64,000 bases of DNA from Schmidtea nova. Lineage: Eukaryota. The notes below the pieces were generated by a model, which was not told the DNA's origin, ran no database searches, and saw only the letters and a program-made list of their open reading frames with translations. The stretch is from NCBI GenBank assembly GCA_044892505.1, contig CM097883.1, positions 286,006,001 to 286,070,000 on the forward strand. The letters are read 5' to 3'. Both the position numbers and the translations under genes were made by a program. This document shows, one piece after another, positions 16,669-40,389 of the stretch; positions within the stretch are counted from its first letter, which is position 1; every line of letters starts with the position of its first letter.

Positions 16669-16806
16669 CCTGAACCCTGTACATAGGGCAGTGGATCTTA
16701 GTTTATTTTAATAATTTTCTTATCCTGATTGCTGTATATAGCACAGGCGTAACTAAATAAAATGCATTATGAAATAAATGTATCTGATCGCTGTACATAG
16801 CGACAG
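16669..16806 (+). other. Three bulged stem-loops with GTA(C/T)AT loop
   Basis: CTG-AA-CCCT-GTACAT-AGGG-CAG; CCTG-AT-TGCT-GTATAT-AGCA-CAGG; CTG-A-TCGCT-GTACAT-AGCGA-CAG; counterparts at 10398-10551. Confidence 0.7.
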
Positions 16807-16934
16807 TGTTGAAAGTGTAATAGGTAAATCATTTTCTCTTCCTGAATTCGCAATTAATGATTGTCGAAAGTATGAGAATCGTTCAAAGCAAGACTGCCAA
16901 TTTCATGTTAATAAACCATTTTGAATTTTAGAAA

Positions 16935-18124: not shown

Positions 18125-18142
18125 TGGGGGCTCAGCCGGGAT
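18125..18142 (+). promoter_or_regulatory. Primer-binding site, tRNA-Pro type
   Basis: TGGGGGCTCAGCCGGGAT 6 nt after the LTR end; resembles the canonical tRNA-Pro PBS TGGGGGCTCGTCCGGGAT. Confidence 0.85.
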
Positions 18143-20338: not shown

Positions 20339-20339
20339 C

Positions 20340-20590
20340 AACATAAGAATTTGAACCTATGATTGCAATAGCGATAGCAACACAAGGAATGTGAACCTGT
20401 GATTGCGATTGTGGATAGCAACACAAGGAATGTGAACCTGTGATTGCGATTATGGATAGCAACATAAGGAATGTGAACCTATGATTGCGATAGTTGATAG
20501 CAACGTAAGGAATATGAACCTATGGTTGCATTGTGAATAACAACGAAAGGAATATGAACCTAAAATTGTAGTCGTCAACGACGTAGGAAT
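20340..20590 (+). repeat. Tandem array B: six degenerate 40-41 bp units
   Basis: Unit like AACACAAGGAATGTGAACCTGTGATTGCGATTGTGGATAGC; GAACCT at 20353, 20393, 20434, 20475, 20516, 20556. Confidence 0.85.
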
Positions 20591-27200: not shown

Positions 27201-27565
27201 AAGTAGCAAGAGGAAAACGTCTACAGGGGACAGTAAAAGGAGAGAAACCGTTCACAACTAAAGTACAAGAAAAAGAGGTGAGAATGAGAGAGACGCCAAC
27301 AGTATTGGTTACATCAAACGCAAATATAGGAATGAGGTTTGTAAAAGGAAAACCGGCATTAAAATGTGGTGTTTCTATGTTAGAAACAAATTATCCAGGT
27401 ATTTATGTATCAAGACAAGCAGCACCGAATGCAAAACCTAAGATAGATACTACAGACATCAGATTGCACGTATATTTAAATAACAAATTGGATTTTTATT
27501 TCATAAAGGCCAAGCATCAATGGAAAAAATATACTACGATCTCATTAACAACGACTGTATATTGA
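21227..27565 (+). CDS. Polyprotein part 1: Gag (CA + 3 CCHC) - Ubl-like modules - Bcl-2-like - signal peptide - N-half of glycoprotein
   Basis: 2112 codons; frame open from 21134, first in-frame ATG only at 21890; domains listed separately below. Confidence 0.9.
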   Translation: MRSRAVSATIEKVDNSQRNKSKQRATSATKKTNPKGSKSRRVIVEKSKIENSKLTKTNESETEESASETYDNYNNTEASDNESINTEEVEAEIDNNSNETNNEHTSETRGNESKTTQDSGIEINEHKEEIKDKFTGEPFNGDASKLETFLKEFGIFVEVCKWKPETIRSRIQLYLKDSALDLYLEAKNSDDQLDSWEKIKNFFQQTFGINKVLNEAFTEFSMRKQKVNESNAVYASELKKLAKLAFNQNSPMSPELMAAIFVGGLRRPYIRAQVGCQGCKTIDEALEIANRFELHMIGSEGRIYLAMDTTQNEQAIKINNHIPNSQQLNRPPPQRRNEGNKIQNYRNQNNYSTQGQTKQCQTCGKLGHWQQECFANLNCKKCGRKGHSESRCYLNSCYNCGQPGHMAKNCQQQNNQQRNWSNNGNRQNYTNQQSNGNRQNFENQQSNYNQNKSTTKEIHLLQEVQRLTELINNTPRGNQQTNQQQMNMMRKVESENERLNRESQARHAQEWARIQREDEQKRQERERQPLRINMMRATNQTRDNKEDIEPETNQINPNPEDEENQKEIVQENEEVIEQKMMLVVMPNDHVFRFEYDEKEEVGVLINKVNKTIPGMTKLPREAFLQTEDEAAIKLKPTDIWKDLGVPMNKMKVTVIQEIEENNDEEKSKPVTKVKSRALKIFEEKIKQRKAMEIEKRRGQIEEPKNNDKKEEIPPKNVPDKVEQTAHINMLRNLTREFSDVESDSDVSSLAGDMLKEPENEDNKIEVAKTPENIQIKEDEIQKLLDNALEVIYNEEFIDKKRYRKFIRAVFRMNYKERLQSREIEILSGYVVKLLDEPLHEYIILIEINECSPRIWIKSPCTNEIYRWVEDRLGSSYKNKFIYSGNELVRRATHLVETGIWPGEITTLSICDNKKEENLQEIAKEANMCFEMRIKPQLVERKERILRENLNSLIEQIIQQIDKNREELTKTEYEKLKQCIENIRDTSHTRHSSYKTWKVIAKMGKAMFKRGEIGDLKIKVKLPNEDTKEIEVIADCTIEELVDVINETLLQREKEDELEDDIIIKYNEHVLGDHDERRLYKIGIWDNHQTIHVIRMDDTSRETPKDEKRRQERRREAMHKLRQIIEIYRRWQIQPEWENVLGELNFNERRLTPVEKHWDVKEKCWKAKGGIYEEEFRPEMEDRYEPEIRRICMVTRKVMPTDLDGPETAAIWLETQRRKADELIELLKGNVQGKRRTIKGLAEFFVAGGEDIISLRKVAKAVTEYKRVNEWCPEQLDNIIKKWRNQENAQEPPQKIHLRIIYPDREKEELWVRLTEKIRDVKKRLKYEPPFHLQHQGRSLENDMEILITPAQLELANTLTVDAIAGQPLKLKEKRIKESGDTQNLRKTMQIKPGTSARQYETTSIKIQERTRPQPYDTEEILTDSDDMLEELTNLTKEKGNNIFERVQELPTTSQAINTQDEVEQEIEIEEVNEISEEEARGANTENERFTQEMEKWWEQRNNEPRDVTEETGRETRLIETGTTMDRRPRRRPKTDPTNIINKTKEERRQEKWEVCLKKLNKIAEAKDQEITQKCQGEGWISKTLMEILAIIDPELKKWWRINEISDKAKALHSAIAPILPELIKEKTKSSHLDWQGTTTLIKRLTEDAENDNKYVIAIAYTIYNLLTLSRGNPKSTAIEKHIKNTANIIAKEIEPYVISKGGWETFAKTNQRNSQAKNMKKKFEEILGELEKEKSGTGSGKSSLNLNSIIMMILIWLISVEGATAFEVFDCDQVALGEKYSLRGTEQCKDATPTELKVLHSKQIYHVYQEADLIKTTVNECKIYKTRFAFYCGHRHYSAIVMPGTEREAIMLQGEDCNKLFKHGEVETRDRIKIRGKAGVILQQTYYVAGAITGGEGYCQGATYPIFGVPATNMVVIDTYTVELKAYEAYFDPATGEMKTLSMCKIEASTCQTGMSTLTYIAKANECQLQLLKEAEFDEVQGKIFQEEEDDEVARGKRLQGTVKGEKPFTTKVQEKEVRMRETPTVLVTSNANIGMRFVKGKPALKCGVSMLETNYPGIYVSRQAAPNAKPKIDTTDIRLHVYLNNKLDFYFIKAKHQWKKYTTISLTTTVY
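21635..22456 (+). other. Ty3/gypsy-type Gag capsid and nucleocapsid
   Basis: PFNGDASKLETFLKEF...SWEKIKNFF...Q..NES...Y...L; three zinc knuckles CQTCGKLGHWQQEC, CKKCGRKGHSESRC, CYNCGQPGHMAKNC (22304-22456). Confidence 0.9.
22961..25315 (+). other. Up to four ubiquitin-like modules, three preceded by helical segments
   Basis: Clearest: LKIKVKLPNEDTKEIEVIADCTIEELVDVI...IIIKYNEHVL...LYKIGIWDNHQTIHVI (24269-24510); weaker at ~22961, ~23747, ~25109. Confidence 0.5.
25880..26350 (+). other. Bcl-2-like domain
   Basis: BH2-like EIEPYVISKGGWETFAK (cf. Bcl-xL HLEPWIQENGGWDTFVE), degenerate BH1-like LDWQGTTTLI, BH3-like ISKTLMEILAIID. Confidence 0.7.
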
Positions 27566-28400
27566 ACAGAGAAATATTAAAGACGAAACTAGCAGTAGCA
27601 ATTACAAACCCGGATAGTGCGATGCCATTACTACCACTTAACGAAGGTCATTTTGGAAGAGTAGTTGGAGAAGTTATGTATGTATATATATGCCAAAAGA
27701 CACAAGCAAACCTAGCAACAACGACCAGAATACGACAAGGACAATGTACCAACGAATTGGAAATTGAATATAAAGGGAAAATAAGATATGTACAACCAGT
27801 GACAAGAATCATTAACCCAGTTAGTTTTGAACCAAACCCTTTCAATTGCAGCAATGCATACGGACCATTATATCAGAAACCAGACGGGAATTGGGTCATG
27901 TTTCCGTCAAGATCAGAAGTACAACCACCTAGAGAATTTGAATTGATGCAACTTTCAAAAGGACGAAAATTTTCCAATATAGATGTAAATAACGGAGGAA
28001 TTTACAGTGCAAAAGATCTTGAAGCAGCACGACAAAATATATTATTTCCAGCTAGAAGAGAAGCAGTATTATCTAGCATTGTAACGATAACAGGAGGAAC
28101 AAGTTACCAAGGAGGACCAAATTATGAATTATTATTGTCACCAGCACATTTTAGGAAAGCGACAGAAAATATGATGAAAGCAATGTGGGGACGATTTTTA
28201 ATTTTCGGACAAATGATGGCCGGAATATTAGGTGTAATTTTAATCATACAAATAATACGAGTGATAATCACACAAATGCTAGCATGTTTTGATATTTATA
28301 AAAGAGAAAAGAAAGTTAATTGGAAATTAATAGCAGGATTTTTACCATTTTTAGCAAAAACGATGGTGTTACATGGTCACTCCAAAGATATTCACAGAAT
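26468..28400 (+). other. Env-like glycoprotein of chuvirus G / herpes gB-like (class III) type, split by a -1 shift at ~27493
   Basis: Signal peptide SIIMMILIWLISVEGATA|FEVFDC, conserved Cys pattern (FDC, CKI..R..FYCG, YCQG, YLNNKL, DCILNREIL, GEVMYVYIC), furin-like RGKR (27209-27220), C-terminal W..FLIFG...AG TM helix. Confidence 0.75.
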
Positions 28401-30798
28401 AAAACGATTATTAAAAATACTGGCAAAAATGAAAGGAACAGATGAAGACGTGGGAAGAAAATTCAAAAAGATAATGACAGATGAACAAGCGAGATTACAA
28501 TTAAAAAGCGAAAGAAAAGGATTATGGGAAAGAATAAGAGGAGATAAAACTCAAGATGATTCCAGTGATGACGATGATAATAATGACGACTGTGAAGGAG
28601 GGCAAAGGTATAGAAACCAAGCACCGCAATATAGCGACAAGAATCCAACAGAAGCATGGAAATGTCACGCACCTCCACCAACAATGTACCAAGAACCATT
28701 ACAGGTATCAGGACACAGAGCAATGCAAATGATGCCAATGACAACTTTATATCCAATTATACCAGAAGATTATAAACTAAGGCGATGTAGAAGTATGGAT
28801 CCGCAAGACGATTCACTCACAATTGCAGTCATGTCATCAAATACAGGACCAGTATTAACCACAACCATAGAAATAAATGGAAAAGAAATAGAAGCGATGA
28901 TAGATACAGGAGCAAATATTTCGGCGATAGATATTAAATGGATATCGCAAGAACAGAGACAAGAAATTGAAAGAACAAATGTTCATGTAATAGCATGTAG
29001 TAAAGAAATAGTTGAAGTTGCAGGAAGATGGTGGGTGAAAATACGACACCAAAATAGAGAAATCGAAACCTATGTAGCAGTAATACCAGCTTTAAGTGTA
29101 CCATGTATAATCGGAACAGATTTAATGCCAACACTATTTAAAGAAATAATCATCGACCTTGGAACAATGAGATTAAAGGACAGAACAAGGAAAATAGGTG
29201 CCATGGAAGCAAAAATAATGATACCGGAAGAAAGAATCATGACGAGATCACAAACCATCAGAATAAATATGCTCAGAGCGGAAGAAATTAACACAACTAG
29301 TCAAGTAGAAAGTGAGAAAATCGATGTTGACAAAGAAATCGTACGAAAAGCCAAAGAAATAAACGAAAGATGGGAAATCAGACAAGAAAAAGACGTATTA
29401 TGGGATATACGACAAATAATCAGTGATTACGCACGAGGATGCCCAACCAAACCAATTATAATAGAATTACTAAAGAAAATACCAGAGATACTCTTATTAC
29501 AAGATACAGGAGGTGCAACTGCACTACACAATGCCATAAGTTGGGGTAAAACGGAAAAAGTAAAAGAATTTTTGAAAATAGCAAAAGAAACGAATCAAAA
29601 TCTAGACATTGTAAATCGAGAATTAGAAACGCCAATGATGACAGCAACACTAAAACTAGCAGACAAAGAAATAGTAGATATACTGATAAACGCAGAATTC
29701 AACTGGACAGCTCGGGATAGAAGAGGAAATACAGTTTTAGATCATGCAATAATGAGTGAAAATCAAATGATACTAAAACATATAACAACCAACCTCACAT
29801 GGGAAATCGATGAATTAATCAAAGGAGAAATTATGAAAGAAGCGATTCGGAAGGGAAACACTAAAACAATATGGAAACTAATACAATGGAAATGGCCGAA
29901 TAATAAAACATGGGTATTGGATATAAACAAAGAATTTAGCGAAGGACAGAATGCACTATTGAGATACTTATTAGAGTTTACGTGCGATCAGAGAACGATG
30001 TTAGCACTAATGAATAGAGGAAAAATAAATATTAGTAAAAACGAAGAGGAATATAAACTAGAAGTCGAAAAGAAAGCGTTATTCAGGAAAATTTGGATAT
30101 GGTGTCAAAAACAACTACGCAAAGACATAAGCTACAAAAATCTAAATGATTTCCAAGAAAAGTATAAAACGATAATAAAGGAATACAAGAAGCTAGTGGA
30201 GATATTAAACGATCCAGAAAAATTTAATCAAGCAATAAATCAGAAAGAAGAAGAAAGTAAAAGGATACTCACACCATTGTTCAACGCAAAGATAGATTAC
30301 CAAGAAAGATTAGATGCAATACACAAAAAAGCAAAGGAACTATTACCAGAATTCAAAAATACTAAATACGCCTTGGAAATACTAGGCGCGATAGTAGAAA
30401 AAGTACACGCGTACGCGAAAGGAATATATAATGGAAATGATATAATAACTATAAAAAGAGAAATGCCAGTTGCGTTTTTATTAACAAAAGAAAGAATAAT
30501 GCCGATTCATAGAGCATTGAGAGCAGGAAAAGACAGTAAAGTAATCGAAATCGCAAGAGTAATGCATCAATGTGGATGTGATATGAATATGATAGACGAA
30601 AAAGGAGACACCCTTATGGTATACGCAGCAAGAGCAAAAACAAAAATCAAAGTATTAGAAGAGTTATATAAAGCAGGCGCAGGATTAATCGGAAAAACTG
30701 TCAAAGACAACTCAATATTAGACGTGACATTATTAGGTCCAAACTGGGAAATGTTGAATTTCATTAAAACAATAACAAACCAAGAAGAGATTATTTAA
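27520..30798 (+). CDS. Polyprotein part 2: C-half of glycoprotein + TM - retropepsin - ankyrin repeats
   Basis: 1092 codons in the -1 frame relative to part 1; IEAMIDTGANISAI...IIGTD protease; two ankyrin clusters; no YxDD RT, RNase H or integrase motifs seen. Confidence 0.9.
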   Translation: MEKIYYDLINNDCILNREILKTKLAVAITNPDSAMPLLPLNEGHFGRVVGEVMYVYICQKTQANLATTTRIRQGQCTNELEIEYKGKIRYVQPVTRIINPVSFEPNPFNCSNAYGPLYQKPDGNWVMFPSRSEVQPPREFELMQLSKGRKFSNIDVNNGGIYSAKDLEAARQNILFPARREAVLSSIVTITGGTSYQGGPNYELLLSPAHFRKATENMMKAMWGRFLIFGQMMAGILGVILIIQIIRVIITQMLACFDIYKREKKVNWKLIAGFLPFLAKTMVLHGHSKDIHRIKRLLKILAKMKGTDEDVGRKFKKIMTDEQARLQLKSERKGLWERIRGDKTQDDSSDDDDNNDDCEGGQRYRNQAPQYSDKNPTEAWKCHAPPPTMYQEPLQVSGHRAMQMMPMTTLYPIIPEDYKLRRCRSMDPQDDSLTIAVMSSNTGPVLTTTIEINGKEIEAMIDTGANISAIDIKWISQEQRQEIERTNVHVIACSKEIVEVAGRWWVKIRHQNREIETYVAVIPALSVPCIIGTDLMPTLFKEIIIDLGTMRLKDRTRKIGAMEAKIMIPEERIMTRSQTIRINMLRAEEINTTSQVESEKIDVDKEIVRKAKEINERWEIRQEKDVLWDIRQIISDYARGCPTKPIIIELLKKIPEILLLQDTGGATALHNAISWGKTEKVKEFLKIAKETNQNLDIVNRELETPMMTATLKLADKEIVDILINAEFNWTARDRRGNTVLDHAIMSENQMILKHITTNLTWEIDELIKGEIMKEAIRKGNTKTIWKLIQWKWPNNKTWVLDINKEFSEGQNALLRYLLEFTCDQRTMLALMNRGKINISKNEEEYKLEVEKKALFRKIWIWCQKQLRKDISYKNLNDFQEKYKTIIKEYKKLVEILNDPEKFNQAINQKEEESKRILTPLFNAKIDYQERLDAIHKKAKELLPEFKNTKYALEILGAIVEKVHAYAKGIYNGNDIITIKREMPVAFLLTKERIMPIHRALRAGKDSKVIEIARVMHQCGCDMNMIDEKGDTLMVYAARAKTKIKVLEELYKAGAGLIGKTVKDNSILDVTLLGPNWEMLNFIKTITNQEEII
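28850..29180 (+). other. Retropepsin aspartic protease domain
   Basis: TIEINGKEIEAMIDTGANISAI (DTG at 28903) and CIIGTDL. Confidence 0.9.
29500..29790 (+). other. IkB-like ankyrin repeats (three)
   Basis: GATALHNAI...LDIVNRELETPMMTA...ARDRRGNTVLDHAI parallels IkB-alpha ANK1-3 (..LNFQNNLQQTPLHLA...RDFRGNTPLHLA). Confidence 0.7.
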
Positions 30799-30824
30799 CA
30801 GAAACTGTAAAAGGACCAAGCGTA

Positions 30825-31400
30825 TTGACAATGATGCAAAACATCAAATTGACAGAAGAAGTATTAAACTGGAAAATACCAAATACAAATAAACCAGCAT
30901 TTAAAGTTAACAAGTTTATGGAGAAAAATCGAAATTGGTGTATCCAAAGCGCACTAATAACTTATATATGGCCCGAAATTGTAGAAATTTTCATGAGAAG
31001 AGAAGACCTGAGATTTACAAACAAGCCTAAAGAAACGGAAAAGGTAGTCAAATGGAAAGAACTGATGAGAACACACCTCCAAAGTTGGATAAAAGCCAAG
31101 AAAGAAATTATACAGTATCAGTTAGACAAGAAAAAGATACCCGAAGATATAGAATACCAAGAATTCGAAGCAAGTAATTTAACATCACTATATTATGCAA
31201 AACTAATAGAAACAAGTAATGTCGAGGACGACATTTTTAACGAGCTAGGGAGAGATAATAATACTGACAAAGACGATGATGATAATAATGAAAACAATGA
31301 CGACGAGAGAAATAAAGACGATGATGAACAATCTAAAACAATCATGAAAAGAAAGGAACAAGTTACAGAAGGAATCCATTATTCAGACCAGAAGTATTAA
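30825..31400 (+). CDS. Probable polyprotein part 3 (ankyrin-like start, acidic tail)
   Basis: Frame open from 30768, overlapping the end of part 2 in the -1 frame; ETVKGPSVLTMM echoes the preceding repeat KTVKDNSILDVT; D/N-rich tail; its stop overlaps the next ATG (TAATG). Confidence 0.7.
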   Translation: MTMMQNIKLTEEVLNWKIPNTNKPAFKVNKFMEKNRNWCIQSALITYIWPEIVEIFMRREDLRFTNKPKETEKVVKWKELMRTHLQSWIKAKKEIIQYQLDKKKIPEDIEYQEFEASNLTSLYYAKLIETSNVEDDIFNELGRDNNTDKDDDDNNENNDDERNKDDDEQSKTIMKRKEQVTEGIHYSDQKY

Positions 31401-33364
31401 TGTTCGCAATAATCATAACGCTTATGGGACAATGTGAAGCAACGAAACAAGAGATATCAGTAGAAATGGAAGTACCAATACAAAAAGCATCAACACAAAT
31501 AATGAATTCAAAAGATATTGAACAAGTATGTTGGGTAAAAGAGAATGAAATTCTCGGAGATAACAACCTATTACGATGTATAATACCAAACCCCGAGCGA
31601 AAAACTATAATAATCGACGAAATGGATATGGAAACATGGTATAGAATATGTGTAATCAGAAAACCCAAAGACGCAGAATCACACAAAACAGTCACATGCC
31701 AAGTATACAAGACACCCAAAGTTCGATACGAGTTCGCCAATGGAATAGACCTTCCAGGACCATTTTATTTTAAAATAACAAGAGAACCAGCATCAAGAAA
31801 AGTCTTACAACAACCAAGAACCAAGATAAGAACACCAAGTATAAGGAATACAACGGATAAACCAGAAGCAAACAGAAGAAATACAACGGATAAACCAGAA
31901 CCAAAAAGACGAACGAAACAAACCACAAGAGTAATCTATAATTCCAAGTTGTTATGTATAGCACTTATTATGACAATACTGAAGCGATTGGAAGAAGGAA
32001 TAGAAATGGATACAATGACATTAATAGACATGGAAGAGACACGAATGACAAATCAAAAATGTTGGTTTAGAAACGATGAAAAATTAGAATTAAAGGAATC
32101 AAGAGAAATTCAGAAATTGGAAGCGAGTAAAACGAACAAAGTAATCAAGATAATAAAGATAAAAACAGACAGAATTCATAAACTATGTTTATTGGAAAAA
32201 GAGAGAAACAAGAAAGGAATAACCAATTGTAAAACATTCCAAGCAAGGAAAATAATAACGTTTGCAAGAAAAATGGGGAAAAGAAACAAACAGAATTTCC
32301 AGAAATTAACCATAACGTTAGAAATAACGGGAATAGAACAAAACGTAAACGGAGTATGCTGGAGAAAATACGAGAAAGAAACGAATAAACATAAATCATC
32401 ACAATGTCAAACAATCAGAGGAACAACCGCAGTACAAATAAAAAGCTTAGAAAGAAATCAAACGTACGAAATATGCCTAGTAAAGGAAAATGATCAAATA
32501 ACGAGAGAAGATTTAGAATGCAGAATATACAAAGCACCGAACAGAGTAAAAACCATTAAAGCAATACGAAAGAATAAAAGTCAACAAAAACCGAAGCATA
32601 ACACTACCGAAAGTCAAACAGAACCAGAGAGGAAAACCTCAGCAACACTTATACTGTGGAAATTGGATGACAAAACAGTGGAAATATGTTGGACAATGAT
32701 CAAGAAATACGAAGAAAGACAACCACAACAATGCGAAAAGATGAATAAAGAAGAGGGGATCAGAATTCAGAACCTACAATTGGACAAACAATACGAAATA
32801 TGCGCAATAGAGAAAGCAGACAAATTTGGAAACCAGCAAGAAAAATGTGGAAACTATTATACACCGACAAATACTATGATCAAAGGAAAAATCAAGAAAC
32901 TAACCTTCGGAGAATTGAATCAAACAACGAAACAAATAGAAAACGAGGAAGTAATAATAAATTCTTATGCCAAATGGAAACCAGAAAAAGTAATTCATGA
33001 AGTCAAAAGGAAACAACAAGAACGACAACAATTGGAACTCAAATTAAAAGGACAATATGGACCAATGATCAACCAAAGCAAATTCACCCAAATTAATATT
33101 AACAAGCAAAGAAGAGAACTAATTGGAGTAGGAATACTGGCAGTATGCGTACCAGTAATAATAATACTATCAATAATATGGCTATGGGACATAATAAAAA
33201 AGAAACCAACCAGACAATGGCCAGATATAAAGATTATGAATTGTAAAATCAAGATACCAGAAGAAGTGAAAAAAGAATTCCAAAGAAGAACCAAAGGCAA
33301 AGAATTTTGGAAGCAAATAGAAGACGAGGAGCGACACGATGAAAAAGCAGTGATGATAGTATAG
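31400..33364 (+). CDS. Type I membrane protein with four FN3-like Cys modules (654 aa)
   Basis: N-terminal hydrophobic leader, four repeats of CW...C...I..L....Y.IC....C, TM LIGVGILAVCVPVIIILSIIWLW, short cytoplasmic tail. Confidence 0.75.
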   Translation: MFAIIITLMGQCEATKQEISVEMEVPIQKASTQIMNSKDIEQVCWVKENEILGDNNLLRCIIPNPERKTIIIDEMDMETWYRICVIRKPKDAESHKTVTCQVYKTPKVRYEFANGIDLPGPFYFKITREPASRKVLQQPRTKIRTPSIRNTTDKPEANRRNTTDKPEPKRRTKQTTRVIYNSKLLCIALIMTILKRLEEGIEMDTMTLIDMEETRMTNQKCWFRNDEKLELKESREIQKLEASKTNKVIKIIKIKTDRIHKLCLLEKERNKKGITNCKTFQARKIITFARKMGKRNKQNFQKLTITLEITGIEQNVNGVCWRKYEKETNKHKSSQCQTIRGTTAVQIKSLERNQTYEICLVKENDQITREDLECRIYKAPNRVKTIKAIRKNKSQQKPKHNTTESQTEPERKTSATLILWKLDDKTVEICWTMIKKYEERQPQQCEKMNKEEGIRIQNLQLDKQYEICAIEKADKFGNQQEKCGNYYTPTNTMIKGKIKKLTFGELNQTTKQIENEEVIINSYAKWKPEKVIHEVKRKQQERQQLELKLKGQYGPMINQSKFTQININKQRRELIGVGILAVCVPVIIILSIIWLWDIIKKKPTRQWPDIKIMNCKIKIPEEVKKEFQRRTKGKEFWKQIEDEERHDEKAVMIV

Positions 33365-33484
33365 AGGGTGGGATATGACTGTAAATAATATTGTAAATTA
33401 CAAAGCATTACCGTATATAGTATGGGTATTAGTATTATAGAGTATATAAAAAGAGAAGAGAAAAATAATAATGTATTTTAGAAA

Positions 33485-33739
33485 ATGAATGTACAAGGAG
33501 AAACAACCGAAATGACTTTGACTATGCGATGGAAAGCACAATGTGAAACGTTAGTTCGATCAATTAATGCACTACAGAATCAATTGGTAGAGAAGCAAAA
33601 TATATTAGCAGATTGTTACAACAATATCTTTGAGCAGTTACATAAAATAGAAGAGCAAGAGAATAATAACAGAACTAACCAGAGAGAATCAAAGATTGAG
33701 ACAAACGATGGAAATAAATCAACTAACAAGAAGAGATAA
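33485..33739 (+). CDS. Small coiled-coil protein (84 aa)
   Basis: Heptad-like LVRSINALQNQLVEKQNIL; preceded by TTTTAG|AAA ATG like its neighbours. Confidence 0.55.
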   Translation: MNVQGETTEMTLTMRWKAQCETLVRSINALQNQLVEKQNILADCYNNIFEQLHKIEEQENNNRTNQRESKIETNDGNKSTNKKR

Positions 33740-33913
33740 ATCAGAAGGTCAATGGCTAGATTGGGTAATAAATGGATTAGAGAATGGTATAGAACCAGAT
33801 TCAACGAGCGAACCATAGTCAAATTGTAGCGGAAAATTGTAGATATGTAAAAATAAAACTCTAGAAAAATCAAAACAAAGAACAAATCAATGTATGTATA
33901 TATTATTGTAGAA

Positions 33914-35269
33914 ATGGATAAAGAGGAACGAGCAGTCGAGATTTTGAGAGCAGCCAACAGAAATTGGAACAAGAGATTTGTATGTGGATATTGTAATAAT
34001 TTATTACGGAAACCAAAGCAAACCGCCTGTGGATGTAGATTATGCACTAGATGTGTACAAATGTTAGAGTTAAAAAGAATAACAGAATGTCCAGAATGTA
34101 AAGAAGGACAAATAGTATTAGACGAAACGAGACCAGATAGAGCAACTCAGAGAGAAATCATGAGCATATTAATTGAATGTATAAATCCACCGTGCATATG
34201 GCAAGGACAAATCAGCGAAATTGAAAATCATATAGAAAATTGTGAAGAAAAGAGAAGCGAATGTGAAAAGTGTAAAGAAACGATAATTTTAAAAGACAAA
34301 GAGAAACACAGAGATGAATGCAAAGAGGAAGAAATCGCATGTGAATATTGCGAAATTCGAGAAACAAGGAGAAAAATTGAAGAGGAGCACATCAATATAA
34401 AAGAAGAGAAAATATGCGAACAGTATGTAGGAGTGTGCCCAAACAAATGTGAAATTACCGAAGAAGTGAAATTACGAGAACATTGGGAAAAGTGTACAGA
34501 AATACCAAGAGAATGTCCTTACAACAGATATGGATGCAAGGAAAAGAAGTTTCAACAAAATATGAAACAACATTTAGAAACAGAAGCAATCAATCATATT
34601 GAAATGACAAACAGAACAATTCAGAAATTGGAAAAAGAAGTGGAATCTCATAAAATAATGATGAACCTATTATTAGAAACGAGAGAACAGTTTGAATTAA
34701 CCCGAGGAAGGATGGAAAAGAAAATAATAGCCATCAAGGAATTAGCAAAAGGAATGAAAGTGCAATATAACAAGTTAATACAAGAAATTGATGAGAAAAA
34801 AGATTTACCAATAGCACCGTATGTGTGGAAATTAACGGATTTCCGAAATAAATTGGAAGATGCACGAAGCTTCAAGAAAACTGCGGTACTAAGCCCACCA
34901 TTTTACTTATGGAAAAACGGGGCTAAAGTGAGATTGAAAGTATATCCAAACGGAGATGGGAAAAGTATGGGAAAACACCTATCAATATTTTTTGCGTTTT
35001 GCAAAGGAGAATATGACGATTTAATCGATTGGCCGATAGGAGTAGGAGTAATGATAAAAATCAGGGGTTTAAACGAAACCATAGAAAAGAGATTCACGAC
35101 AGAAAAAGGAGCAGTTACGAGTAACAGACCAACAGAAGAATGTGGATTAGCAAGTGGAGAACCACACTTTGTATTACAAAGCAAGATATGGGGATTATTG
35201 TATGAGGACACCTTATACATAGAAATGGAAAGGAATGAGAAGGCAGATAGAAAAGGATGGTTGGCGTAG
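33914..35269 (+). CDS. TRAF: Full-length TRAF-family protein (RING, TRAF zinc fingers, coiled coil, MATH)
   Basis: CGYC..LL..PKQTACGCRLC..C...CPEC; several CxxC..H..C fingers; YVWKLTDF...SPPFY...LKVYPNGDG..MGKHLSIFF..KGEYDDLIDWP. Likely start ATG 33914 after TTGTAG. Confidence 0.92.
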   Translation: MDKEERAVEILRAANRNWNKRFVCGYCNNLLRKPKQTACGCRLCTRCVQMLELKRITECPECKEGQIVLDETRPDRATQREIMSILIECINPPCIWQGQISEIENHIENCEEKRSECEKCKETIILKDKEKHRDECKEEEIACEYCEIRETRRKIEEEHINIKEEKICEQYVGVCPNKCEITEEVKLREHWEKCTEIPRECPYNRYGCKEKKFQQNMKQHLETEAINHIEMTNRTIQKLEKEVESHKIMMNLLLETREQFELTRGRMEKKIIAIKELAKGMKVQYNKLIQEIDEKKDLPIAPYVWKLTDFRNKLEDARSFKKTAVLSPPFYLWKNGAKVRLKVYPNGDGKSMGKHLSIFFAFCKGEYDDLIDWPIGVGVMIKIRGLNETIEKRFTTEKGAVTSNRPTEECGLASGEPHFVLQSKIWGLLYEDTLYIEMERNEKADRKGWLA

Positions 35270-35374
35270 CAAGAGAAAATGATCGTGTAAATAAACTGTA
35301 CAAAACAATATAAAATGATAAATAAACAAAAATAATAAAAGTAGTCTGATTGAAAATATTTGTAATTATAGAAA

Positions 35375-36478
35375 ATGGGAAACGTCGAAATCAGTTTACA
35401 AGAAGTTACCGCACATCAAGATGAAGTTATTTGTGAGCATTTAGAACAAATTGAAAGTTGGATCCACGCATATTACCACAAACAAAAAGAAGTAGAAAGA
35501 CAAGCCGAACAAATAACAGAAGCCAAAAGATTAAAGCGATTAAGTCAAGATAAAATAGACGAATTATATGAATTATTAGAGAAACAAAAAGAATATTATA
35601 AAAAGATGATGAAAGAACGACGAGAAGAAAGAGAACGAGAACGAACAGAAATGGAACGGAAAATGTACTCCATTACCGAGCAAGCAAGATATTGGAAAAA
35701 AGAAGCGAAAGAATCTTATACGAAAGCAAGAGAAATAATTGAAAGAACGGCGTACAGCGATGATTGGAAATTATTTGAAGAAATCGATAAATTAAAAGAG
35801 GAATTAGAACAGAAAACCTATCAGGAAATATCGAGCAAAAAATGGAATAAAAAGAGACAACAATTCATCAGAGAGCAAGCAGGAAAAATTAAACAACTTA
35901 TGCACCAGATTGAAAGGTCGGAAAGAGAATTATATTTCAGTAAACAACAATCAGATGCAAACCTCAGAGCAGGGATGCAGAAAGAGGAAGATATGAAGCG
36001 CGATATTAATGGTTATCAAGGAGTAATCACTCAAAAGAAGATAGAATTAAAGAAAACTAAAGAAAGATTAGAAGAAGCAAAACAAAGCTATGAAGAAAAT
36101 TTATTAAAATTAGAGGAAGCAAAACAAAGCTATGAGGAAAATTTATTAAATTTAACCAAAGAAAATGAAGAGTTGAAACAAAAACTGATACAAAAATTAA
36201 CACCACCAAAAGAGACAGATATCACCAAAGCAGTAATAAAAATGATGGAAGAGGAAGAGAAAAACAATAAAATAACAGAATTAGAAAAACAGATCGAAGC
36301 ATTAACAGAACAATCAAATTATTTAGAATACCTGTTAGACGAAGAAATTCAATTGTCACACTTCTATCGAGATGAAGTAACAATGTGGAGAAACACGATA
36401 GTATGGTTACCACTCCCTACGAATCAAGTGGAACCTCAAGATGAAGGTTTTCACGAACCCAATGAGTCGTTAGTTTAA
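35375..36478 (+). CDS. Long coiled-coil protein (367 aa)
   Basis: E/K/Q-rich heptads, internal duplication LEEAKQSYEENLL x2; TTATAG|AAA ATG. Confidence 0.8.
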   Translation: MGNVEISLQEVTAHQDEVICEHLEQIESWIHAYYHKQKEVERQAEQITEAKRLKRLSQDKIDELYELLEKQKEYYKKMMKERREERERERTEMERKMYSITEQARYWKKEAKESYTKAREIIERTAYSDDWKLFEEIDKLKEELEQKTYQEISSKKWNKKRQQFIREQAGKIKQLMHQIERSERELYFSKQQSDANLRAGMQKEEDMKRDINGYQGVITQKKIELKKTKERLEEAKQSYEENLLKLEEAKQSYEENLLNLTKENEELKQKLIQKLTPPKETDITKAVIKMMEEEEKNNKITELEKQIEALTEQSNYLEYLLDEEIQLSHFYRDEVTMWRNTIVWLPLPTNQVEPQDEGFHEPNESLV

Positions 36479-36552
36479 AGAGAAGCGAAAATTCTTTGTA
36501 AATATCTGTAACATAACAATGTCAAACTGTATTGACAAATTTGTAAAGTGAA

Positions 36553-37116
36553 ATGAAGAAGCTCGCAATACTGATAATCCTAAATGTAATCGAAATCACC
36601 CAACAAAGAGAAGACCGTCCGATATCAAAAGAAAATCTACAAGTCTTACCCGAGAAAATCTATAAAGAAATAGATGATCTATTAAAAGAAGCAACTAAAG
36701 AAATTTCTCAAATTCAATTGTCAACAGCACCTAAACCAGTATCAACGCAACAAACCCTGTGCAAAATCAATAACAAATTAGAGAAGATTCGAAAAACCTT
36801 AAAAGAAAGTAAAGAAACTATAAAGAATTTACATCGAGCAGAAATTCAATACCAAGAGAGATGGATCGTTGCGATTATAATCGTATTAACAATTAGTACA
36901 ACAACCTGCGCAATTACCATTCTCATCGCAGTATACAGAATAAAAGTTCTTAAACAAAAACAATCAATCATCAATCAAACAACAGCATATGATGACAATG
37001 CCCGAAGACAAATGAGAAATCAGTTCAACAGAATACGAACCCAATACGAGTTACCAGCAATTCCACAGAACCAGTCCAATCCAGTGCGAGTTATGAACTA
37101 TTTGTATAAACCATAA
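36553..37116 (+). CDS. Small type I membrane protein (187 aa)
   Basis: Leader MKKLAILIILNVI, helical ectodomain, TM WIVAIIIVLTISTTTCAITILIAVY. Confidence 0.7.
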   Translation: MKKLAILIILNVIEITQQREDRPISKENLQVLPEKIYKEIDDLLKEATKEISQIQLSTAPKPVSTQQTLCKINNKLEKIRKTLKESKETIKNLHRAEIQYQERWIVAIIIVLTISTTTCAITILIAVYRIKVLKQKQSIINQTTAYDDNARRQMRNQFNRIRTQYELPAIPQNQSNPVRVMNYLYKP

Positions 37117-37306
37117 AGACGTGACAAAATATTTGATTAACAATTTTCTGAATTTTCTATATTTTCTTCGTGATTACGTATAGACTAAACTCACTTTATG
37201 TGAATCTTTATGCTTATGTATCAAACGTAGAAATTTTTATGAATGTTGAATACAAGTAATATTGTATAATTAATTGCGGGACGCAATTTTAGGGGTCCCC
37301 GAGTGA

Positions 37307-40131
37307 TGTTGGATCCACCATTTGGTCCACATTTAGCATAAAAAATAATAATTATAAGAAATAAAATAAGAATAAATTAAAATAAATATAATTATGAAAA
37401 TATCAGTAAAAACGAATTAAAATGTAATAAAGAATATTAATTTTCTATCAAAATTTAGAAGAAAGTAAATAGAAAATGTAAAAGTGTTAAAGAAACAATG
37501 ATATTTAATTATATTTAAGGAAAAATAAAGAAATAATAAAGAAAAAGAATTACAAAAAATATTAAAAATCAAAATAGCAAATCGCTAGCAATTGACAACA
37601 AAATCAATTGATTTTAGCGTAATAAAAGTTATTAATTGTGCTGATCTGATGCTCAGCTTCACGCTGATTGGTCCAAGCTTTGATCTGATCAGTATATATA
37701 CTGATACAGATCCAGATAATTTTAATGTTTTTTATATGCTTTTTAGTTATTGAGAATATTCAAATTTGAGATCATTCTTAAAACCAAAGGTATGGATTAT
37801 TGATTGTTTTTATTTGTGTAATTTTATTGTGAAGTTCTGACATTGCCATTATGTTTATCCAATTAATAAAATGTTTTTCGAATATGATTTATTTTTTTTT
37901 GTGGTTGAATATAGAATTAAATCAAGCTTCTTCCACTGTGCAATCAGTGGTAGGAGACGACTTTATATATCTATTATATATCTTTTATTGAGCTTCTTCC
38001 ATCGTGTAATCGGTGGAAGGAGGCAACATTATGTTGTGATATTAACAATTAGGTTGAAGTATATTTTTATAAACAATTTTTGGGTCGAGCTTCTTCCACT
38101 GTGAAATCAGTGGAAGGAGGCGAATATATATATTATCTATATACCGTATTTATAGTAGAAAATTACGTACGATTTAAGGGGCTCCGATCACCGTGCAATC
38201 GGTGAAATGGAGGCATACTGTGCCGAGTAGAAACGACTGCTCCGTACAGTTAGGCCGTCCGACCGGTGTAAAGCGCCGTGACGAGGGTAGGAATTCTTAT
38301 TTAACAATGATTTTTAACCCTATTTTTCACTGGATAGTATAACCAGTTGAAGTTTTATTTTATAATCGATTTAAATTTTTTGAGTTTATAGTTAAGTTGA
38401 GTTTTGATTTTAGTTGGATACAGATGTAACTGCGATTTGAGTAATCTGATTTTACCTTGAGATTCACAGAGTGTTAGCGTATATTTTTCGATTGTCACAT
38501 CTGGGGTTTGTGGGCATAGAGCGGCAGATACACGGTTAAGAATTTGTACAAAATATAATTTTAATAACAACATAAAAATCGATAACTCTAATAACGTAGT
38601 GATCTACTACGCAAGTAACATAGCAGCAATAGGCTATAGGTTCAAACATTCCACATAAATAATTAAACATAATTGCTTATCCTGAACCCTGTACATAGGG
38701 CAGTGGATCTTAGTTTATTTTAATAATTTTCTTATCCTGATTGCTGTATATAGCACAGGCGTAACTAAATAAAATGCATTATGAAATAAATGTATCTGAT
38801 CGCTGTACATAGCGACAGTGTTGAAAGTGTAATAGGTAAATCATTTTCTCTTCCTGAATTCGCAATTAATGATTGTCGAAAGTATGAGAATCGTTCAAAG
38901 CAAGACTGCCAATTTCATGTTAATAAACCATTTTGAATTTTAGAAAATGTCAGCCAACACAGCAACTAATCAAGCCGAATTAGATAAAGCATGGAGGATA
39001 ATTCGCAGCCTCGAAAAGGAAATGCTGCGAAAATCGGAAAAAATAAAAGAAGCCGATGGCATAATCTCCAACCTAAAGAAAAGCTGGTTCAGTCCAGAAC
39101 AAATGAAAATACAAATTACAAAAACTCAACGCTCTCAGCGAGCTAACAGCGAATTACAAATGGAATTAGACGCGACGAAGATGGAATTAAAGAAATGCCT
39201 AAAATCCGTAACGGCATCGTATTTAACTCAAGAGCTCAGCCAGCTCATTCGACCAATCACTTATCAGCATTGGGCTGACGAGAAAGCAGGATGCACAAAA
39301 GGAACGAACACCGAGGAACCCTCTCAGGTTCAAGCAACAACAGCAGCCAGTACACCAAAGAACCCGATAAATCCAGAAGTCAAGAAGAAAAAGAAGAGCA
39401 AGATGGGCGCACGTCAGCGTCGCTGGAAGAAACAAGTTCTTCAGCAATTGGCTCAACAATCCAAAGAAATTCCAGAAATTGATTTGACCATGAATTTTGC
39501 AATATCGGATGAAGACATTACCAAATACTTTGAATAGAACTTCTGTGATTTAGTATTTTCGCTTATTAAATAATTTTTGTTTGTATTTATTTTATGGTAA
39601 AGTATAGAAAATAGAGTGATTTATTAAAAAATTTAAAATAATTTAAAGGAAAATATAGAATAAATTAACTATACATTAGAATTAACAATAAGATTAACAT
39701 AAATCTAATAAACAATAGAAGCATTTAAGAGATAATAAATTGTAATTGATGAAGGATTATTTGTTGATATTGTAAAGAAGGGGGCTGAAAGAAAAGTAGA
39801 GAGTTGAAATATATTGTAGAGAAAGGGGGGCTAAAGAGACATTGAAATGAAAGATAATGGATGCGGATAGATTAAAGTTAAAGCGTAAGTCCTTCTATCG
39901 GCAGCGAGACGAACCCGTGAACATAAATGGGGAGTAGTTTTAGCAATAGAGCTCACCTGCCCATCATTGTTCAGACACCTTGCACTTTTCCAACTCGATT
40001 ATTACAGGGAAATGATCGAGGGTGCTCGTGTGATATGTAAGCATTTTATGTGAGGTTTTGGATGGAGGAATCCCTAGAGCGTTTTGTTTAATTTACTATT
40101 GTTGTTTTAACCCAATCCGAAACCAACAACA
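37307..40131 (+). repeat. 3' LTR (2825 bp)
   Basis: Copy of 15295-18118, followed by TTAT. Confidence 0.95.
38947..39537 (+). CDS. Second copy of the LTR-encoded basic protein
   Basis: Differs from 16935-17525 by N>S and I>T. Confidence 0.8.
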   Translation: MSANTATNQAELDKAWRIIRSLEKEMLRKSEKIKEADGIISNLKKSWFSPEQMKIQITKTQRSQRANSELQMELDATKMELKKCLKSVTASYLTQELSQLIRPITYQHWADEKAGCTKGTNTEEPSQVQATTAASTPKNPINPEVKKKKKSKMGARQRRWKKQVLQQLAQQSKEIPEIDLTMNFAISDEDITKYFE

Positions 40132-40389
40132 TTATTAAAAAACGACATTACTTATTTGTCGACCTAATATAATAAATTTATATTTTCCCAGAATTTCATA
40201 AAATTCACTGGAAACAATGCCATTTCGTGAAGATGAAATTGGAATATAGTATCACTTTTTTTATTTATTAAAATATTTATTATGGTCAGCCTTTCAGATA
40301 TTTCAGGTACCTCGAACAACTGCATTTCGTCAGATATCCGAAAAATGTTTGAAAATTGTAAGTTGACCTAATATATATTGAAAAAGTTA

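What the first reader, a model, noticed from the sequence alone, without database searches (positions are those of the whole stretch)
28850..37306. Recently mobilised yet has no RT, RNase H or integrase: needs a helper
Seen: after the protease come ankyrin repeats, not RT; no YxDD, RNase H or HHCC/DDE motifs in any ORF between the LTRs. The LTRs differ at only a handful of ~2825 positions and the TSD is intact, so insertion was recent, while ~16 kb of ORFs remain nearly intact. Inference: a non-autonomous partner that supplies capsid, envelope and host modulators while a sister element supplies Pol, i.e. a possible bipartite or helper-dependent retroelement system.
Basis: partly seen in the sequence, partly recalled or inferred. 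Interest (0 to 1): 0.88.

Follow-up and report, generated by a model that had tools for sequence, protein, structure and literature searches.

The report
Pol-less copy of a Burro retroelement
This is a young 24.8-kb copy of the giant "Burro" type of retrovirus-like element described in planarian flatworms; its odd gene order and host-like genes are normal for that type, and it has lost the reverse transcriptase and integrase part, which one copy alone cannot tie to a helper.

Summary
Two 2,824-bp LTRs (15295-18118, 37307-40131) differ by 3 substitutions and 1 indel, end TG...CA, and sit in a 4-bp target duplication. About 15.6 kb of plus-strand ORFs lie between them. No RT, RNase H, integrase or dUTPase is detectable by Pfam or PDB searches.

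The layout Gag + three CCHC knuckles, long extension, in-frame mononegavirus-type fusion glycoprotein, protease, ankyrin, with RING and TRAF/MATH accessory ORFs, matches published Burro elements of planarians (PMC6431247). Canonical Burro carries PR-dUTPase-RT-RH-IN. So capsid, envelope and host modulators are the family's normal cargo, not a partner's specialisation.

This copy is best read as a Pol-deleted Burro derivative. It is non-autonomous now. A single copy does not show helper-driven movement: the deletion could have arisen during reverse transcription of a full-length parent RNA, after integration, or in assembly. The near-intact ORFs are explained by the insertion's youth.

I found no other copies: seven exact-protein look-ups, one viral-contig scan and two metagenome scans were empty. 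Two unnamed database proteins show that the Gag + extension module is conserved elsewhere.

Novelty is modest and interest about 0.3.

The parts
15291..15294 (.). Target-site duplication, left copy (TTAT)
   Evidence: Read directly from the sequence. It matches 40132-40135.
15295..18118 (+). 5' LTR, 2,824 bp, TG...CA ends
   Evidence: Repeat finder and BLAST: 99.86% identity to the 3' LTR, with 3 mismatches and 1 gap. Ends read.
16935..17525 (+). ORF inside the LTR (196 aa), also present in the 3' LTR at 38947-39537
   Evidence: Found by the ORF list. It is 42% identical (E 3e-35) to an open 198-aa ORF in a diverged solo LTR at 11321-11917. pN/pS is about 0.5, with synonymous sites saturated.
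18125..18141 (+). Primer-binding-site-like sequence (TGG-initiated, 17 nt), 6 nt after the 5' LTR
   Evidence: Read directly from the sequence. The tRNA species is not identified, and no tRNA gene lies in the window.
18515..18976 (+). Upstream accessory ORF with a C-terminal RING finger (153 aa)
   Evidence: Pfam zf-C3HC4_3, E 1e-11.
19614..20562 (+). Two adjacent 41-bp tandem arrays in the leader
   Evidence: Tandem Repeats Finder: 17.5 and 5.6 copies. Tandem repeats are drawn in the published Burro maps (figure legend).
21227..30798 (+). Polyprotein span, about 3,190 codons: Gag, extension, envelope, protease, ankyrin. Open throughout except for one frame change inside the envelope part.
   Evidence: ORF list, Pfam, geometry. 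Canonical Burro ORF1 is 4,873 or 5,140 aa and includes Pol.
21227..22462 (+). Gag: capsid-like domain (21743-22024) and three CCHC zinc knuckles (22289-22462)
   Evidence: Pfam Retrotrans_gag E 4.9e-05 and zf-CCHC E 3.2e-12 with 3 stretches. Three CCHC strings by regex. PDB hits are to retroviral nucleocapsids. 34% identity to P0002 over 565 columns, E 3e-76.
23384..25024 (+). Conserved extension of Gag with no RT-like content. It contains a possible ubiquitin-like module at 24158-24535.
   Evidence: It gave the only hit among 1.84 billion representatives: P0001, E 8e-54, 32% identity. Ubiquitin-like evidence is weak: Pfam OTU1_UBXL E 0.037; a low-confidence model (pLDDT 41) with strand-strand-helix-strand-strand order; roughly a third of the top 50 Foldseek hits (17 by my count) are ubiquitin-fold, none significant.
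26282..26386 (+). Possible BCL2-like stretch just upstream of the envelope (weak)
   Evidence: The only PDB sequence hits of 25034-26446 are five Bcl-xL chains at E 1.4-1.8. The model is all-helical but low confidence, pLDDT 47, and the fold search was uninformative.
26450..28356 (+). Envelope gene: Monjiviricetes-type (class III-like) fusion glycoprotein, with a signal-like hydrophobic start and a membrane anchor at 28189-28296. Broken by one frame change.
   Evidence: Pfam PF24664 on the two pieces searched apart: E 2.4e-22 (profile 4-208) and E 8.3e-40 (profile 326-596). Hydrophobic segments.
28861..29133 (+). Retroviral-type aspartic protease
   Evidence: Pfam RVP E 3.4e-07. IDTGA and IIGTDL strings present.
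29134..29478 (+). 115 codons between protease and ankyrin, where canonical Burro has dUTPase-RT-RH-IN after the protease. No recognisable domain.
   Evidence: Pfam gives 0 families at E up to 5. PDB gives no relevant hit at E up to 10.
29479..30798 (+). Ankyrin-repeat region (clusters at 29479-29763 and 30487-30744), running to the end of the polyprotein ORF
   Evidence: Pfam Ank_2 E 2e-12 and E 9.6e-04 for the second cluster. PDB hits are DARPins and ankyrin proteins. The stretch between the clusters has no RT or IN hit.
30825..31400 (+). Accessory ORF, 191 aa, unknown function
   Evidence: ORF list. No Pfam family.
31400..33364 (+). Accessory ORF, 654 aa, 19 cysteines, one hydrophobic segment near the C-terminus. 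Unknown, possibly a membrane protein.
   Evidence: ORF list, composition. No Pfam or PDB hit.
33890..35269 (+). Accessory ORF, 459 aa, TRAF-like: TRAF zinc finger (34409-34573) and MATH domain (34820-35230)
   Evidence: Pfam MATH_2 E 6.2e-20, TRAF-mep_MATH E 1.3e-17, zf-TRAF E 2.4e-07. The MATH domain is 32% identical to the MATH domain embedded in P0001.
35375..36478 (+). Accessory ORF, 367 aa, E/K/L/Q-rich and probably coiled coil. Holds the lone YSDD string.
   Evidence: ORF list, composition, sequence context. No Pfam hit.
36553..37116 (+). Accessory ORF, 187 aa, with one hydrophobic segment
   Evidence: ORF list, hydropathy. Only sub-threshold Pfam noise.
37307..40131 (+). 3' LTR
40132..40135 (.). 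Target-site duplication, right copy (TTAT)

Best explanation
The element is a Burro-type giant Gypsy-like LTR retroelement, an endogenous retrovirus-like element of the kind described in planarians.

Its polyprotein reads Gag, long extension, in-frame mononegavirus-type envelope, protease, ankyrin. RING, TRAF/MATH and other accessory ORFs surround it. This copy lacks the dUTPase-RT-RNase H-integrase block that canonical Burro carries after the protease. It is therefore a Pol-deleted derivative.

- **Shown:** it inserted recently by the normal LTR route, as near-identical LTRs, TG...CA ends, a 4-bp duplication and a PBS indicate.
- **Inferred:** the Pol proteins that made and integrated its DNA came from a Pol-bearing Burro genome.

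The simplest version is a one-off event. Either the deletion arose by template switching while a full-length parent RNA was being reverse-transcribed, so the parent's own proteins did the work. Or it arose in the chromosome after integration.

The copy is non-autonomous today but is not evidence of a dedicated two-part system.
For: **LTR anatomy:**

**Match to the published Burro layout** (PMC6431247). That layout includes a retrotrans_gag motif plus 2-3 CCHC knuckles, MATH_TRAF_C and ankyrin. It also has accessory ORFs that may alternatively sit inside the polyprotein, and tandem repeats. Its envelope has hits to mononegavirus fusion glycoproteins and lies in frame between gag and pol, described there as the first such case.
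- Found here: Gag with three knuckles, the envelope between Gag and protease, PR, ankyrin, TRAF/MATH, 41-bp arrays.

**Size deficit fits a missing Pol**
- About 3,190 codons against 4,873 or 5,140.
- 24,837 bp against more than 30 kb.

**No Pol by any search:**

**The extension is a conserved non-RT module.** P0001 and P0002 share Gag plus extension at 32-34% identity.

**Host context**
- Window GC is about 31%, against more than 70% A/T reported for Schmidtea.
- A related solo LTR 2.9 kb upstream shows that several lineages of the family live in this genome.

**Youth explains the intact ORFs.** Four LTR differences imply about 0.07% change per copy. That predicts roughly 14 events and 3 indels in the 19.2-kb interior. 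One frame change is seen (my arithmetic).
Against: - No canonical Burro sequence was available, so the position of ankyrin relative to integrase in the full-length family, and hence the exact deleted block, is inferred from text only.
- The reading frame stays open from the protease into ankyrin. A random deletion does that only about one time in three, and a selected non-autonomous lineage would be expected to preserve it.
- BIR was not found.
- BCL2-like and ubiquitin-like motifs are only weakly indicated.
- Host identity is inferred, not shown.
- Copy number of this variant is unknown.
Confidence: 0.6

Rival explanations
1. Amplifying helper-dependent sublineage. The Pol deletion is older than this insertion. 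Pol-less RNAs that still encode Gag, envelope, protease and accessory proteins are packaged, reverse-transcribed and integrated by Pol from co-expressed full-length Burro elements. The genome would then hold a family of such copies.
For: - The cis elements needed for this are intact: LTR ends, PBS, long leader.
- The frame is preserved across the protease-ankyrin junction.
- Pol-bearing Burro elements are reported in thousands of copies and as highly active.
- The terminal LTR bases (TGTTGG... and ...CA) are shared with a roughly 35% diverged solo LTR, so integrase recognition ends look conserved across lineages.
- Non-autonomous LTR derivatives moved in trans are well documented in plants, as LARD, TRIM and TR-GAG (PMC13570524 and PMC8704663; Kalendar 2004, cited).
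Against: - Only one copy is in hand.
- Seven exact look-ups, five with the element's own ORFs and two with P0001 and P0002, found nothing. Three collection scans also found nothing.
- These blanks are weak evidence, because the host genome does not seem to be in those collections.
- Intact ORFs are explained by youth alone.
Confidence: 0.28
2. Assembly artefact. The element is full length in the animal, and the Pol block was dropped when near-identical Burro copies were collapsed or mis-joined. The envelope frame change could likewise be a homopolymer error in A-rich sequence.
For: - Planarian genomes are reported as hard to assemble because of Burro elements and AT bias.
- The coding strand is 46% A.
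- An N run at 43383-43525 shows the region is not gap-free.
Against: - There is no gap inside the element.
- The junction lies in one continuous open reading frame.
- Both LTR-flank junctions give a matching 4-bp duplication.
Confidence: 0.08
3. True bipartite system. This lineage never had Pol in the same genome. A structural and modulator element and a separate Pol element co-evolve as obligate partners.
For: Only the intactness of the non-Pol genes and the absence of Pol.
Against: - All described family members have Pol in the same polyprotein.
- The protease, normally the first Pol-side domain, is still here and is followed by an unassignable 115 codons. That looks like a deletion scar rather than a design.
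- No partner element is visible in the window. The flanks hold only a sub-threshold integrase fragment on the other strand.
Confidence: 0.03
4. A highly divergent or novel polymerase or integrase is hidden in one of the unassigned ORFs: the Gag extension, the 654-aa ORF or the 367-aa ORF.
For: - About 2,000 codons have no assigned fold.
- One YSDD string exists.
Against: - RT and integrase of LTR elements are normally easy Pfam hits, and none appears even at E up to 5.
- The YSDD string lies in a charged helix.
- The extension's only relatives are Gag-linked proteins without RT.
Confidence: 0.02

Closest known systems
Burro giant Gypsy-like LTR retroelements of planarians: Burro1/GYPSM1 of Schmidtea mediterranea and the Burro-like element of Dugesia tigrina (PMC6431247; Grohme et al. 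2018 as cited there)
   Same: - Very large LTR element with long LTRs and tandem repeats.
- N-terminal Gag with a retrotrans_gag motif and three CCHC knuckles, at the head of a huge polyprotein.
- Mononegavirus-like fusion glycoprotein in frame between Gag and protease.
- Ankyrin and MATH/TRAF modules, and accessory ORFs that in other lineages are polyprotein subdomains.
- AT-rich host DNA.
   Different: - No dUTPase, RT, RNase H or integrase.
- 24.8 kb instead of more than 30 kb.
- MATH/TRAF is in a downstream accessory ORF. It is inside ORF1 in S. mediterranea and in an upstream ORF in D. tigrina.
- An upstream RING ORF is present and BIR was not found.
- Only 32-34% identity to the two database relatives, so this is a distinct lineage.
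Non-autonomous LTR retrotransposon derivatives of plants: LARD, TRIM, TR-GAG (PMC13570524, PMC8704663; Kalendar et al. 2004 as cited in PMC6431247)
   Same: LTRs and priming sites are kept while Pol is absent, so movement, if any, depends on Pol from an autonomous relative. TR-GAG elements likewise keep Gag.
   Different: - Those classes are defined by many copies amplified in trans, and here one copy is known.
- Those classes lack full coding capacity or keep only Gag. This copy keeps about 15.6 kb of ORFs, including envelope, protease and host-like genes.
- The host here is an animal.
Mosquito LTR retrotransposons with a captured chuvirus (Jingchuvirales) glycoprotein (PMC7642597, title and abstract seen)
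   Same: An LTR retroelement carries a glycoprotein of the Monjiviricetes type (the same Pfam family hit here, PF24664).
   Different: Beyond the shared glycoprotein type, the search result I saw gives no basis for comparing gene order or host. Burro places its envelope in frame between Gag and protease, which PMC6431247 calls the first such case.
Internally deleted, replication-defective proviruses and the mouse ETn/MusD pair (from my own knowledge, not checked here)
   Same: Deleted copies with intact LTRs can be made in one replication round, or be copied with proteins from a competent relative.
   Different: - Those are vertebrate retrovirus lineages with conventional gene order.
- ETn has lost essentially all coding capacity.

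Membership tests
Burro giant Gypsy-like retroelements (planarians) | LTR retroelement anatomy: long direct terminal repeats, target duplication, primer-binding site | tested here: met
   2,824-bp LTRs at 99.86% identity, TG...CA ends, 4-bp TSD, and a 17-nt PBS-like site.
Burro giant Gypsy-like retroelements (planarians) | Gigantism: internal region up to 25 kb, more than 30 kb in total | tested here: inconclusive
   The internal region is 19.2 kb and the total 24.8 kb. That is far above ordinary LTR elements but below the published figure. The shortfall is about the size of a Pol block.
Burro giant Gypsy-like retroelements (planarians) | N-terminal Gag (retrotrans_gag plus 2-3 CCHC knuckles) heading a multi-thousand-residue polyprotein | tested here: met
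   Pfam Retrotrans_gag E 4.9e-05 and three zf-CCHC. The polyprotein span is about 3,190 codons.
Burro giant Gypsy-like retroelements (planarians) | Envelope with mononegavirus-type fusion glycoprotein homology, in frame between gag and the protease | tested here: met
   PF24664 gave E 2.4e-22 and 8.3e-40 on the two pieces, which lie between the knuckles and PR. One frame change interrupts it in this copy.
Burro giant Gypsy-like retroelements (planarians) | PR-dUTPase-RT-RNase H-integrase block | tested here: not met
   PR is present. dUTPase, RT, RNase H and integrase are absent from all frames tested. It is therefore filed as a Burro-derived, Pol-deleted copy, not as a complete member.
Burro giant Gypsy-like retroelements (planarians) | Host-like accessory modules: MATH_TRAF_C, ankyrin, ubiquitin/SUMO-like, BCL2-like, BIR | tested here: inconclusive
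   - MATH/TRAF and ankyrin are clearly present.
- Ubiquitin-like and BCL2-like are only weakly indicated.
- BIR was not found at the Pfam thresholds used.
- A RING ORF is present.
Burro giant Gypsy-like retroelements (planarians) | Sequence relatedness to a named Burro reference and a planarian host | not testable with these tools
   - No Burro reference sequence or planarian genome was reachable.
- The only relatives, P0001 and P0002, are unnamed UniParc/MetaClust entries.
- GC of about 31% agrees with the more than 70% A/T reported for Schmidtea.
Ty3/Gypsy (Metaviridae) LTR retrotransposons | RT phylogeny and PR-RT-RH-IN domain order | not testable with these tools
   There is no RT or IN in this copy to place. 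Assignment rests on the published classification of Burro.
Non-autonomous LTR retrotransposon lineages (LARD/TRIM/TR-GAG-like) | LTRs and priming sites retained, Pol absent | tested here: met
   for the cis parts. for the absence of Pol.
Non-autonomous LTR retrotransposon lineages (LARD/TRIM/TR-GAG-like) | Multiple independent insertions sharing the same internal structure, showing amplification in trans | not testable with these tools
   Exact-protein look-ups and collection scans returned nothing. The host genome is apparently not in those collections.
Non-autonomous LTR retrotransposon lineages (LARD/TRIM/TR-GAG-like) | An autonomous partner with matching LTR ends and PBS in the same genome | not testable with these tools
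   - The literature reports abundant Pol-bearing Burro elements.
- In the window there is only a diverged solo LTR with similar termini and a sub-threshold integrase fragment.

The most novel reading that the evidence does not exclude
A Pol-less Burro sublineage keeps a working Gag, envelope, protease and a set of host-like modulators (ankyrin, TRAF, RING), and spreads in planarian genomes by using Pol of full-length Burro elements. This would be a coding 'satellite' of an endogenous retrovirus-like element in an animal, under its own purifying selection.
Probability: 0.25. Interest if true: 0.6.

Novelty: new member of a known kind. Interest (0 to 1): 0.3.

Why it matters
Burro elements are the largest LTR retroelements known and unusual virus-like polyproteins, with envelope and host-like apoptosis and ubiquitin modules fused between Gag and Pol.

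A young, otherwise intact copy that lacks only Pol is useful in two ways. It marks where the Pol block can be lost without closing the reading frame. If it proves to be multi-copy, it would show that coding, envelope-bearing retroelements of animals can have helper-dependent derivatives, as plant LTR elements do.

As it stands it is mainly a correction. The features that made the finding look exotic are the known architecture of a described family.

Tried and rejected
- **Hidden RT or IN.** Pfam at E up to 5 on all main ORFs and pieces, the 10 largest alternative-frame plus segments and the 10 largest minus segments. PDB sequence searches. Nothing found. The YSDD string is in a charged helix.
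- **Relatives by protein search.** Gag alone and the whole first reading frame found nothing. The exhaustive representative search of the extension gave one hit, P0001. A search with P0001 gave P0002. Neither is named or linked to a contig.
- **Other copies.** Five exact look-ups of window ORFs were not on record. Scans with the Gag-extension alignment in viral contigs and metagenomes, and an LTR-end/PBS pattern in metagenomes, found nothing. I did not use the envelope as a locus query, to avoid fetching animal viruses.
- **Structure.** Two AlphaFold jobs, on the BCL2-like candidate and the ubiquitin-like candidate, gave low-confidence models with pLDDT 47 and 41. Their Foldseek results are not significant.
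- **Pol in the flanks.** Only a piggyBac-type transposase, a GIY-YIG ORF, a DDE_1 fragment, a knuckle remnant and a sub-threshold rve match.
- **RNA scans.** tRNA and Rfam scans of the window were empty.
- **Literature.** Grohme et al. 2018 is not held. Troyka and the errantivirus papers were read and found not relevant to this architecture.

Full report
**1. What is in the sequence**

- A direct repeat pair frames a 24,837-bp unit. The 5' LTR is 15295-18118 and the 3' LTR is 37307-40131. They align over 2,826 columns at 99.86% identity, with 3 mismatches and 1 gap.
- Both LTRs begin TGTTGG and end CA. The four bases TTAT precede the first and follow the second.
- Six bases after the 5' LTR lies a 17-nt TGG-initiated site with the look of a tRNA 3'-end complement. 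I could not name the tRNA, and the window has no tRNA gene or Rfam match.
- I see no long polypurine run before the 3' LTR, only a short AGGGG.
- The coding strand is 46% A. At that composition a stop is expected about every 13 codons (my estimate), so the long ORFs are not chance. Plus-strand ORFs of 150 aa or more cover 81% of the 19,187-bp interior.

**2. Gene content, in window coordinates**

| Feature | Coordinates | Evidence |
|---|---|---|
| RING-finger ORF | 18515-18976 | Pfam |
| Two 41-bp tandem arrays | 19614-20562 | |
| Polyprotein span, about 3,190 codons | 21227-30798 | |
| Gag: capsid-like domain, three CCHC knuckles | 21227-22462 | |
| Long extension | after Gag, up to the envelope | see section 4 |
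| Monjiviricetes-type fusion glycoprotein | 26450-28356 | PF24664, pieces searched apart, E 2.4e-22 and 8.3e-40; signal-like start and membrane anchor |
| Retroviral-type aspartic protease | 28861-29133 | |
| Unassignable stretch, 115 codons | 29134-29478 | |
| Ankyrin repeats, two clusters | 29479-30798 | |
| Downstream ORF, 191 aa | 30825-31400 | no family hit |
| Downstream ORF, 654 aa, cysteine-rich, one hydrophobic segment | 31400-33364 | |
| Downstream ORF, 459 aa, TRAF zinc finger plus MATH | 33890-35269 | |
| Downstream ORF, 367 aa, probably coiled coil | 35375-36478 | |
| Downstream ORF, 187 aa | 36553-37116 | |

- The polyprotein span is open except for one frame change, which falls inside the envelope gene. 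I count that as one break of the frameshift kind.
- I found no in-frame stops in the recognisable domains.
- Whether the 191-aa and 654-aa ORFs are separate genes or displaced parts of the polyprotein cannot be told without relatives.

**3. Is Pol really absent?**

Yes, as far as sequence methods can see.

- Pfam at E up to 5 found no RT, RNase H, integrase or dUTPase in the main ORFs or their pieces.
- The same holds for the ten largest alternative-frame plus segments and the ten largest minus-strand segments.
- PDB sequence searches found only nucleocapsid knuckles and ankyrin proteins.
- Nothing relevant turned up in the two unassigned stretches after the protease.
- The single YSDD string lies in a charged helical context.
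- The flanks of the window hold no Pol either. They contain a piggyBac-type transposase, a GIY-YIG ORF, a DDE_1 fragment, a zinc-knuckle remnant and one sub-threshold integrase-core match on the other strand.

**4. What the extension is**

- An exhaustive HMMER search of 1,200 residues of the extension against 1.84 billion representatives gave one hit. It is P0001, at E 8e-54 and 32% identity.
- P0001 matches 23384-24727 and 24812-25024. Between those two blocks it carries a MATH domain that this element lacks at that place but encodes in the downstream TRAF-like ORF.
- A search with P0001 found P0002. P0002 has Gag with zinc knuckles plus the start of the same extension, at 34% identity to this Gag with E 3e-76.
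- Gag plus extension is therefore a conserved module of an element family present in at least one other genome. It is not a polymerase.
- A ubiquitin-like module inside it (24158-24535) and a BCL2-like stretch just before the envelope (26282-26386) are hinted at only weakly.

**5. Identification**

The layout matches the published description of Burro elements of planarians (PMC6431247). That description includes:

- Giant Gypsy-like LTR retroelements, present in thousands of copies.
- An ORF1 of 4,873 aa in S. mediterranea and 5,140 aa in D. tigrina, starting with a typical Gag (retrotrans_gag plus three or two CCHC knuckles).
- MATH_TRAF_C, a ubiquitin/SUMO-like motif and a BCL2-like motif.
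- An envelope region with hits to mononegavirus fusion glycoproteins, located in frame between gag and pol, followed by PR, dUTPase, RT, RH and IN.
- BIR and ankyrin motifs.
- Accessory ORFs that in other species are subdomains of the polyprotein.

Other points agree with this assignment:

- Planarian genomes are reported as more than 70% A/T with Burro elements over 30 kb (PMC11410931). The window is about 31% GC.
- Burro1 is described as highly abundant and active (PMC8532177).

Host identity is inferred from this match and from composition. It was not shown directly.

**6. How the Pol-less copy most likely arose**

The polyprotein is about 1,700-1,950 codons shorter than the published ORF1s, and the element is at least 5 kb shorter than 30 kb. 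That is roughly a Pol block plus some accessory modules. Three routes give a single young Pol-less provirus:

- **a.** Deletion by template switching during reverse transcription of a full-length parent RNA. The parent's own proteins then made and integrated the DNA, and no helper is needed.
- **b.** Deletion in the chromosome after integration, or a misassembly.
- **c.** Copying of an already Pol-less RNA with Pol from another Burro element, that is, helper dependence.

It predicts further copies with the same junction at other loci, which I could not test.

- The open frame across the junction mildly favours (c) but is expected one time in three by chance.
- The near-intact ORFs carry no weight. 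Four LTR differences mean about 0.07% change per copy. That predicts roughly 14 events, about 3 of them indels, in the interior. One frame change is seen.

**7. Other copies**

- Seven exact-protein look-ups found nothing on record. Five used window ORFs and two used P0001 and P0002.
- Scans of viral contigs and metagenomes with the Gag-extension alignment found nothing.
- A metagenome scan with an LTR-end/PBS pattern found nothing.
- These blanks say little, because the host genome is evidently not in those collections.
- Inside the window, a solo LTR of a related lineage lies at 9223-12386. It is about 35% diverged, has the same TGTTGG start and CA end, and has its own 4-bp duplication CAAA. 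It shows that more than one lineage of the family has been active here.

**8. Comparison with what is known**

- In how it works, the copy resembles any LTR element with intact ends and no Pol. It cannot move by itself and, if it moves, uses a relative's enzymes. Plant LARD, TRIM and TR-GAG elements do this (Kalendar 2004, cited).
- By membership, it meets the Burro features for Gag, envelope position, protease, ankyrin and MATH/TRAF.
- It fails the RT/IN feature, so I file it as a Burro-derived Pol-deleted copy, not as a complete member.
- Membership of an amplified non-autonomous lineage is untested.
- The held literature does not mention Pol-less Burro derivatives.

**9. Verdict**

- Novelty: new member of a known kind.
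- Interest is 0.3.
- The most novel reading still open is a coding, envelope-bearing, helper-dependent Burro sublineage. I give it probability 0.25 and interest 0.6 if true.

- The two reading frames of the envelope were always searched apart.
- The consensus lines that align_proteins printed were not used.
- The N run at 43383-43525 was left alone.
- The envelope was not used to fetch loci, so that no animal virus would be retrieved.

Noticed in passing
window 9223-12386: Solo LTR (3,164 bp) of a related, roughly 35% diverged lineage. It has the same TGTTGG start and CA end, its own 4-bp target duplication CAAA, and is colinear with the element's LTR.
   Followed up: yes
window 16935-17525, 38947-39537 and 11321-11917: The LTRs encode a protein of about 196 aa that is kept open in the diverged solo LTR as well. 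Identity is 42% (E 3e-35), pN/pS is about 0.5, and it has a coiled-coil N-part and a basic C-part. An LTR-encoded gene of unknown role.
   Followed up: partly
window 24727-24812 versus 33890-35269: The database relative P0001 carries its MATH domain inside the Gag extension. This element has only about 28 codons at that point and encodes TRAF/MATH as a separate downstream ORF. This is an example of a module moving between polyprotein and accessory ORF.
   Followed up: partly
window 50284-51813: Intact 509-aa piggyBac-type transposase ORF (Pfam DDE_Tnp_1_7, E 2.6e-70).
   Followed up: no
window 42842-43234 (minus strand) and 43383-43525: GIY-YIG-like ORF (E 8.4e-04, below the Pfam cut-off), possibly part of a Penelope-like element. 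It lies next to a 143-base run of N, which was left untouched.
   Followed up: no
window 58128-58557 and 60270-60611 (minus strand): Decayed retroelement remnants. One is a zinc-knuckle stretch resembling the Gag knuckles of P0002 (41% over 53 aa). The other is a sub-threshold integrase-core match (E 0.0021). Their order does not fit a single element.
   Followed up: partly
window 54250-54582: Fragment of a DDE_1 (pogo/Tigger-type) transposase, E 1.3e-09.
   Followed up: no
window 62952-63998: Open stretch of 349 codons running off the window end, with an RIIa domain and cyclic-nucleotide-binding domains. It looks like a host gene for a PKA regulatory subunit.
   Followed up: no
window 40525-40844 and 45702-47370: A 159-bp tandem duplication lies about 400 bp downstream of the 3' LTR, and a cluster of local direct repeats lies further downstream. 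Origin unknown.
   Followed up: no
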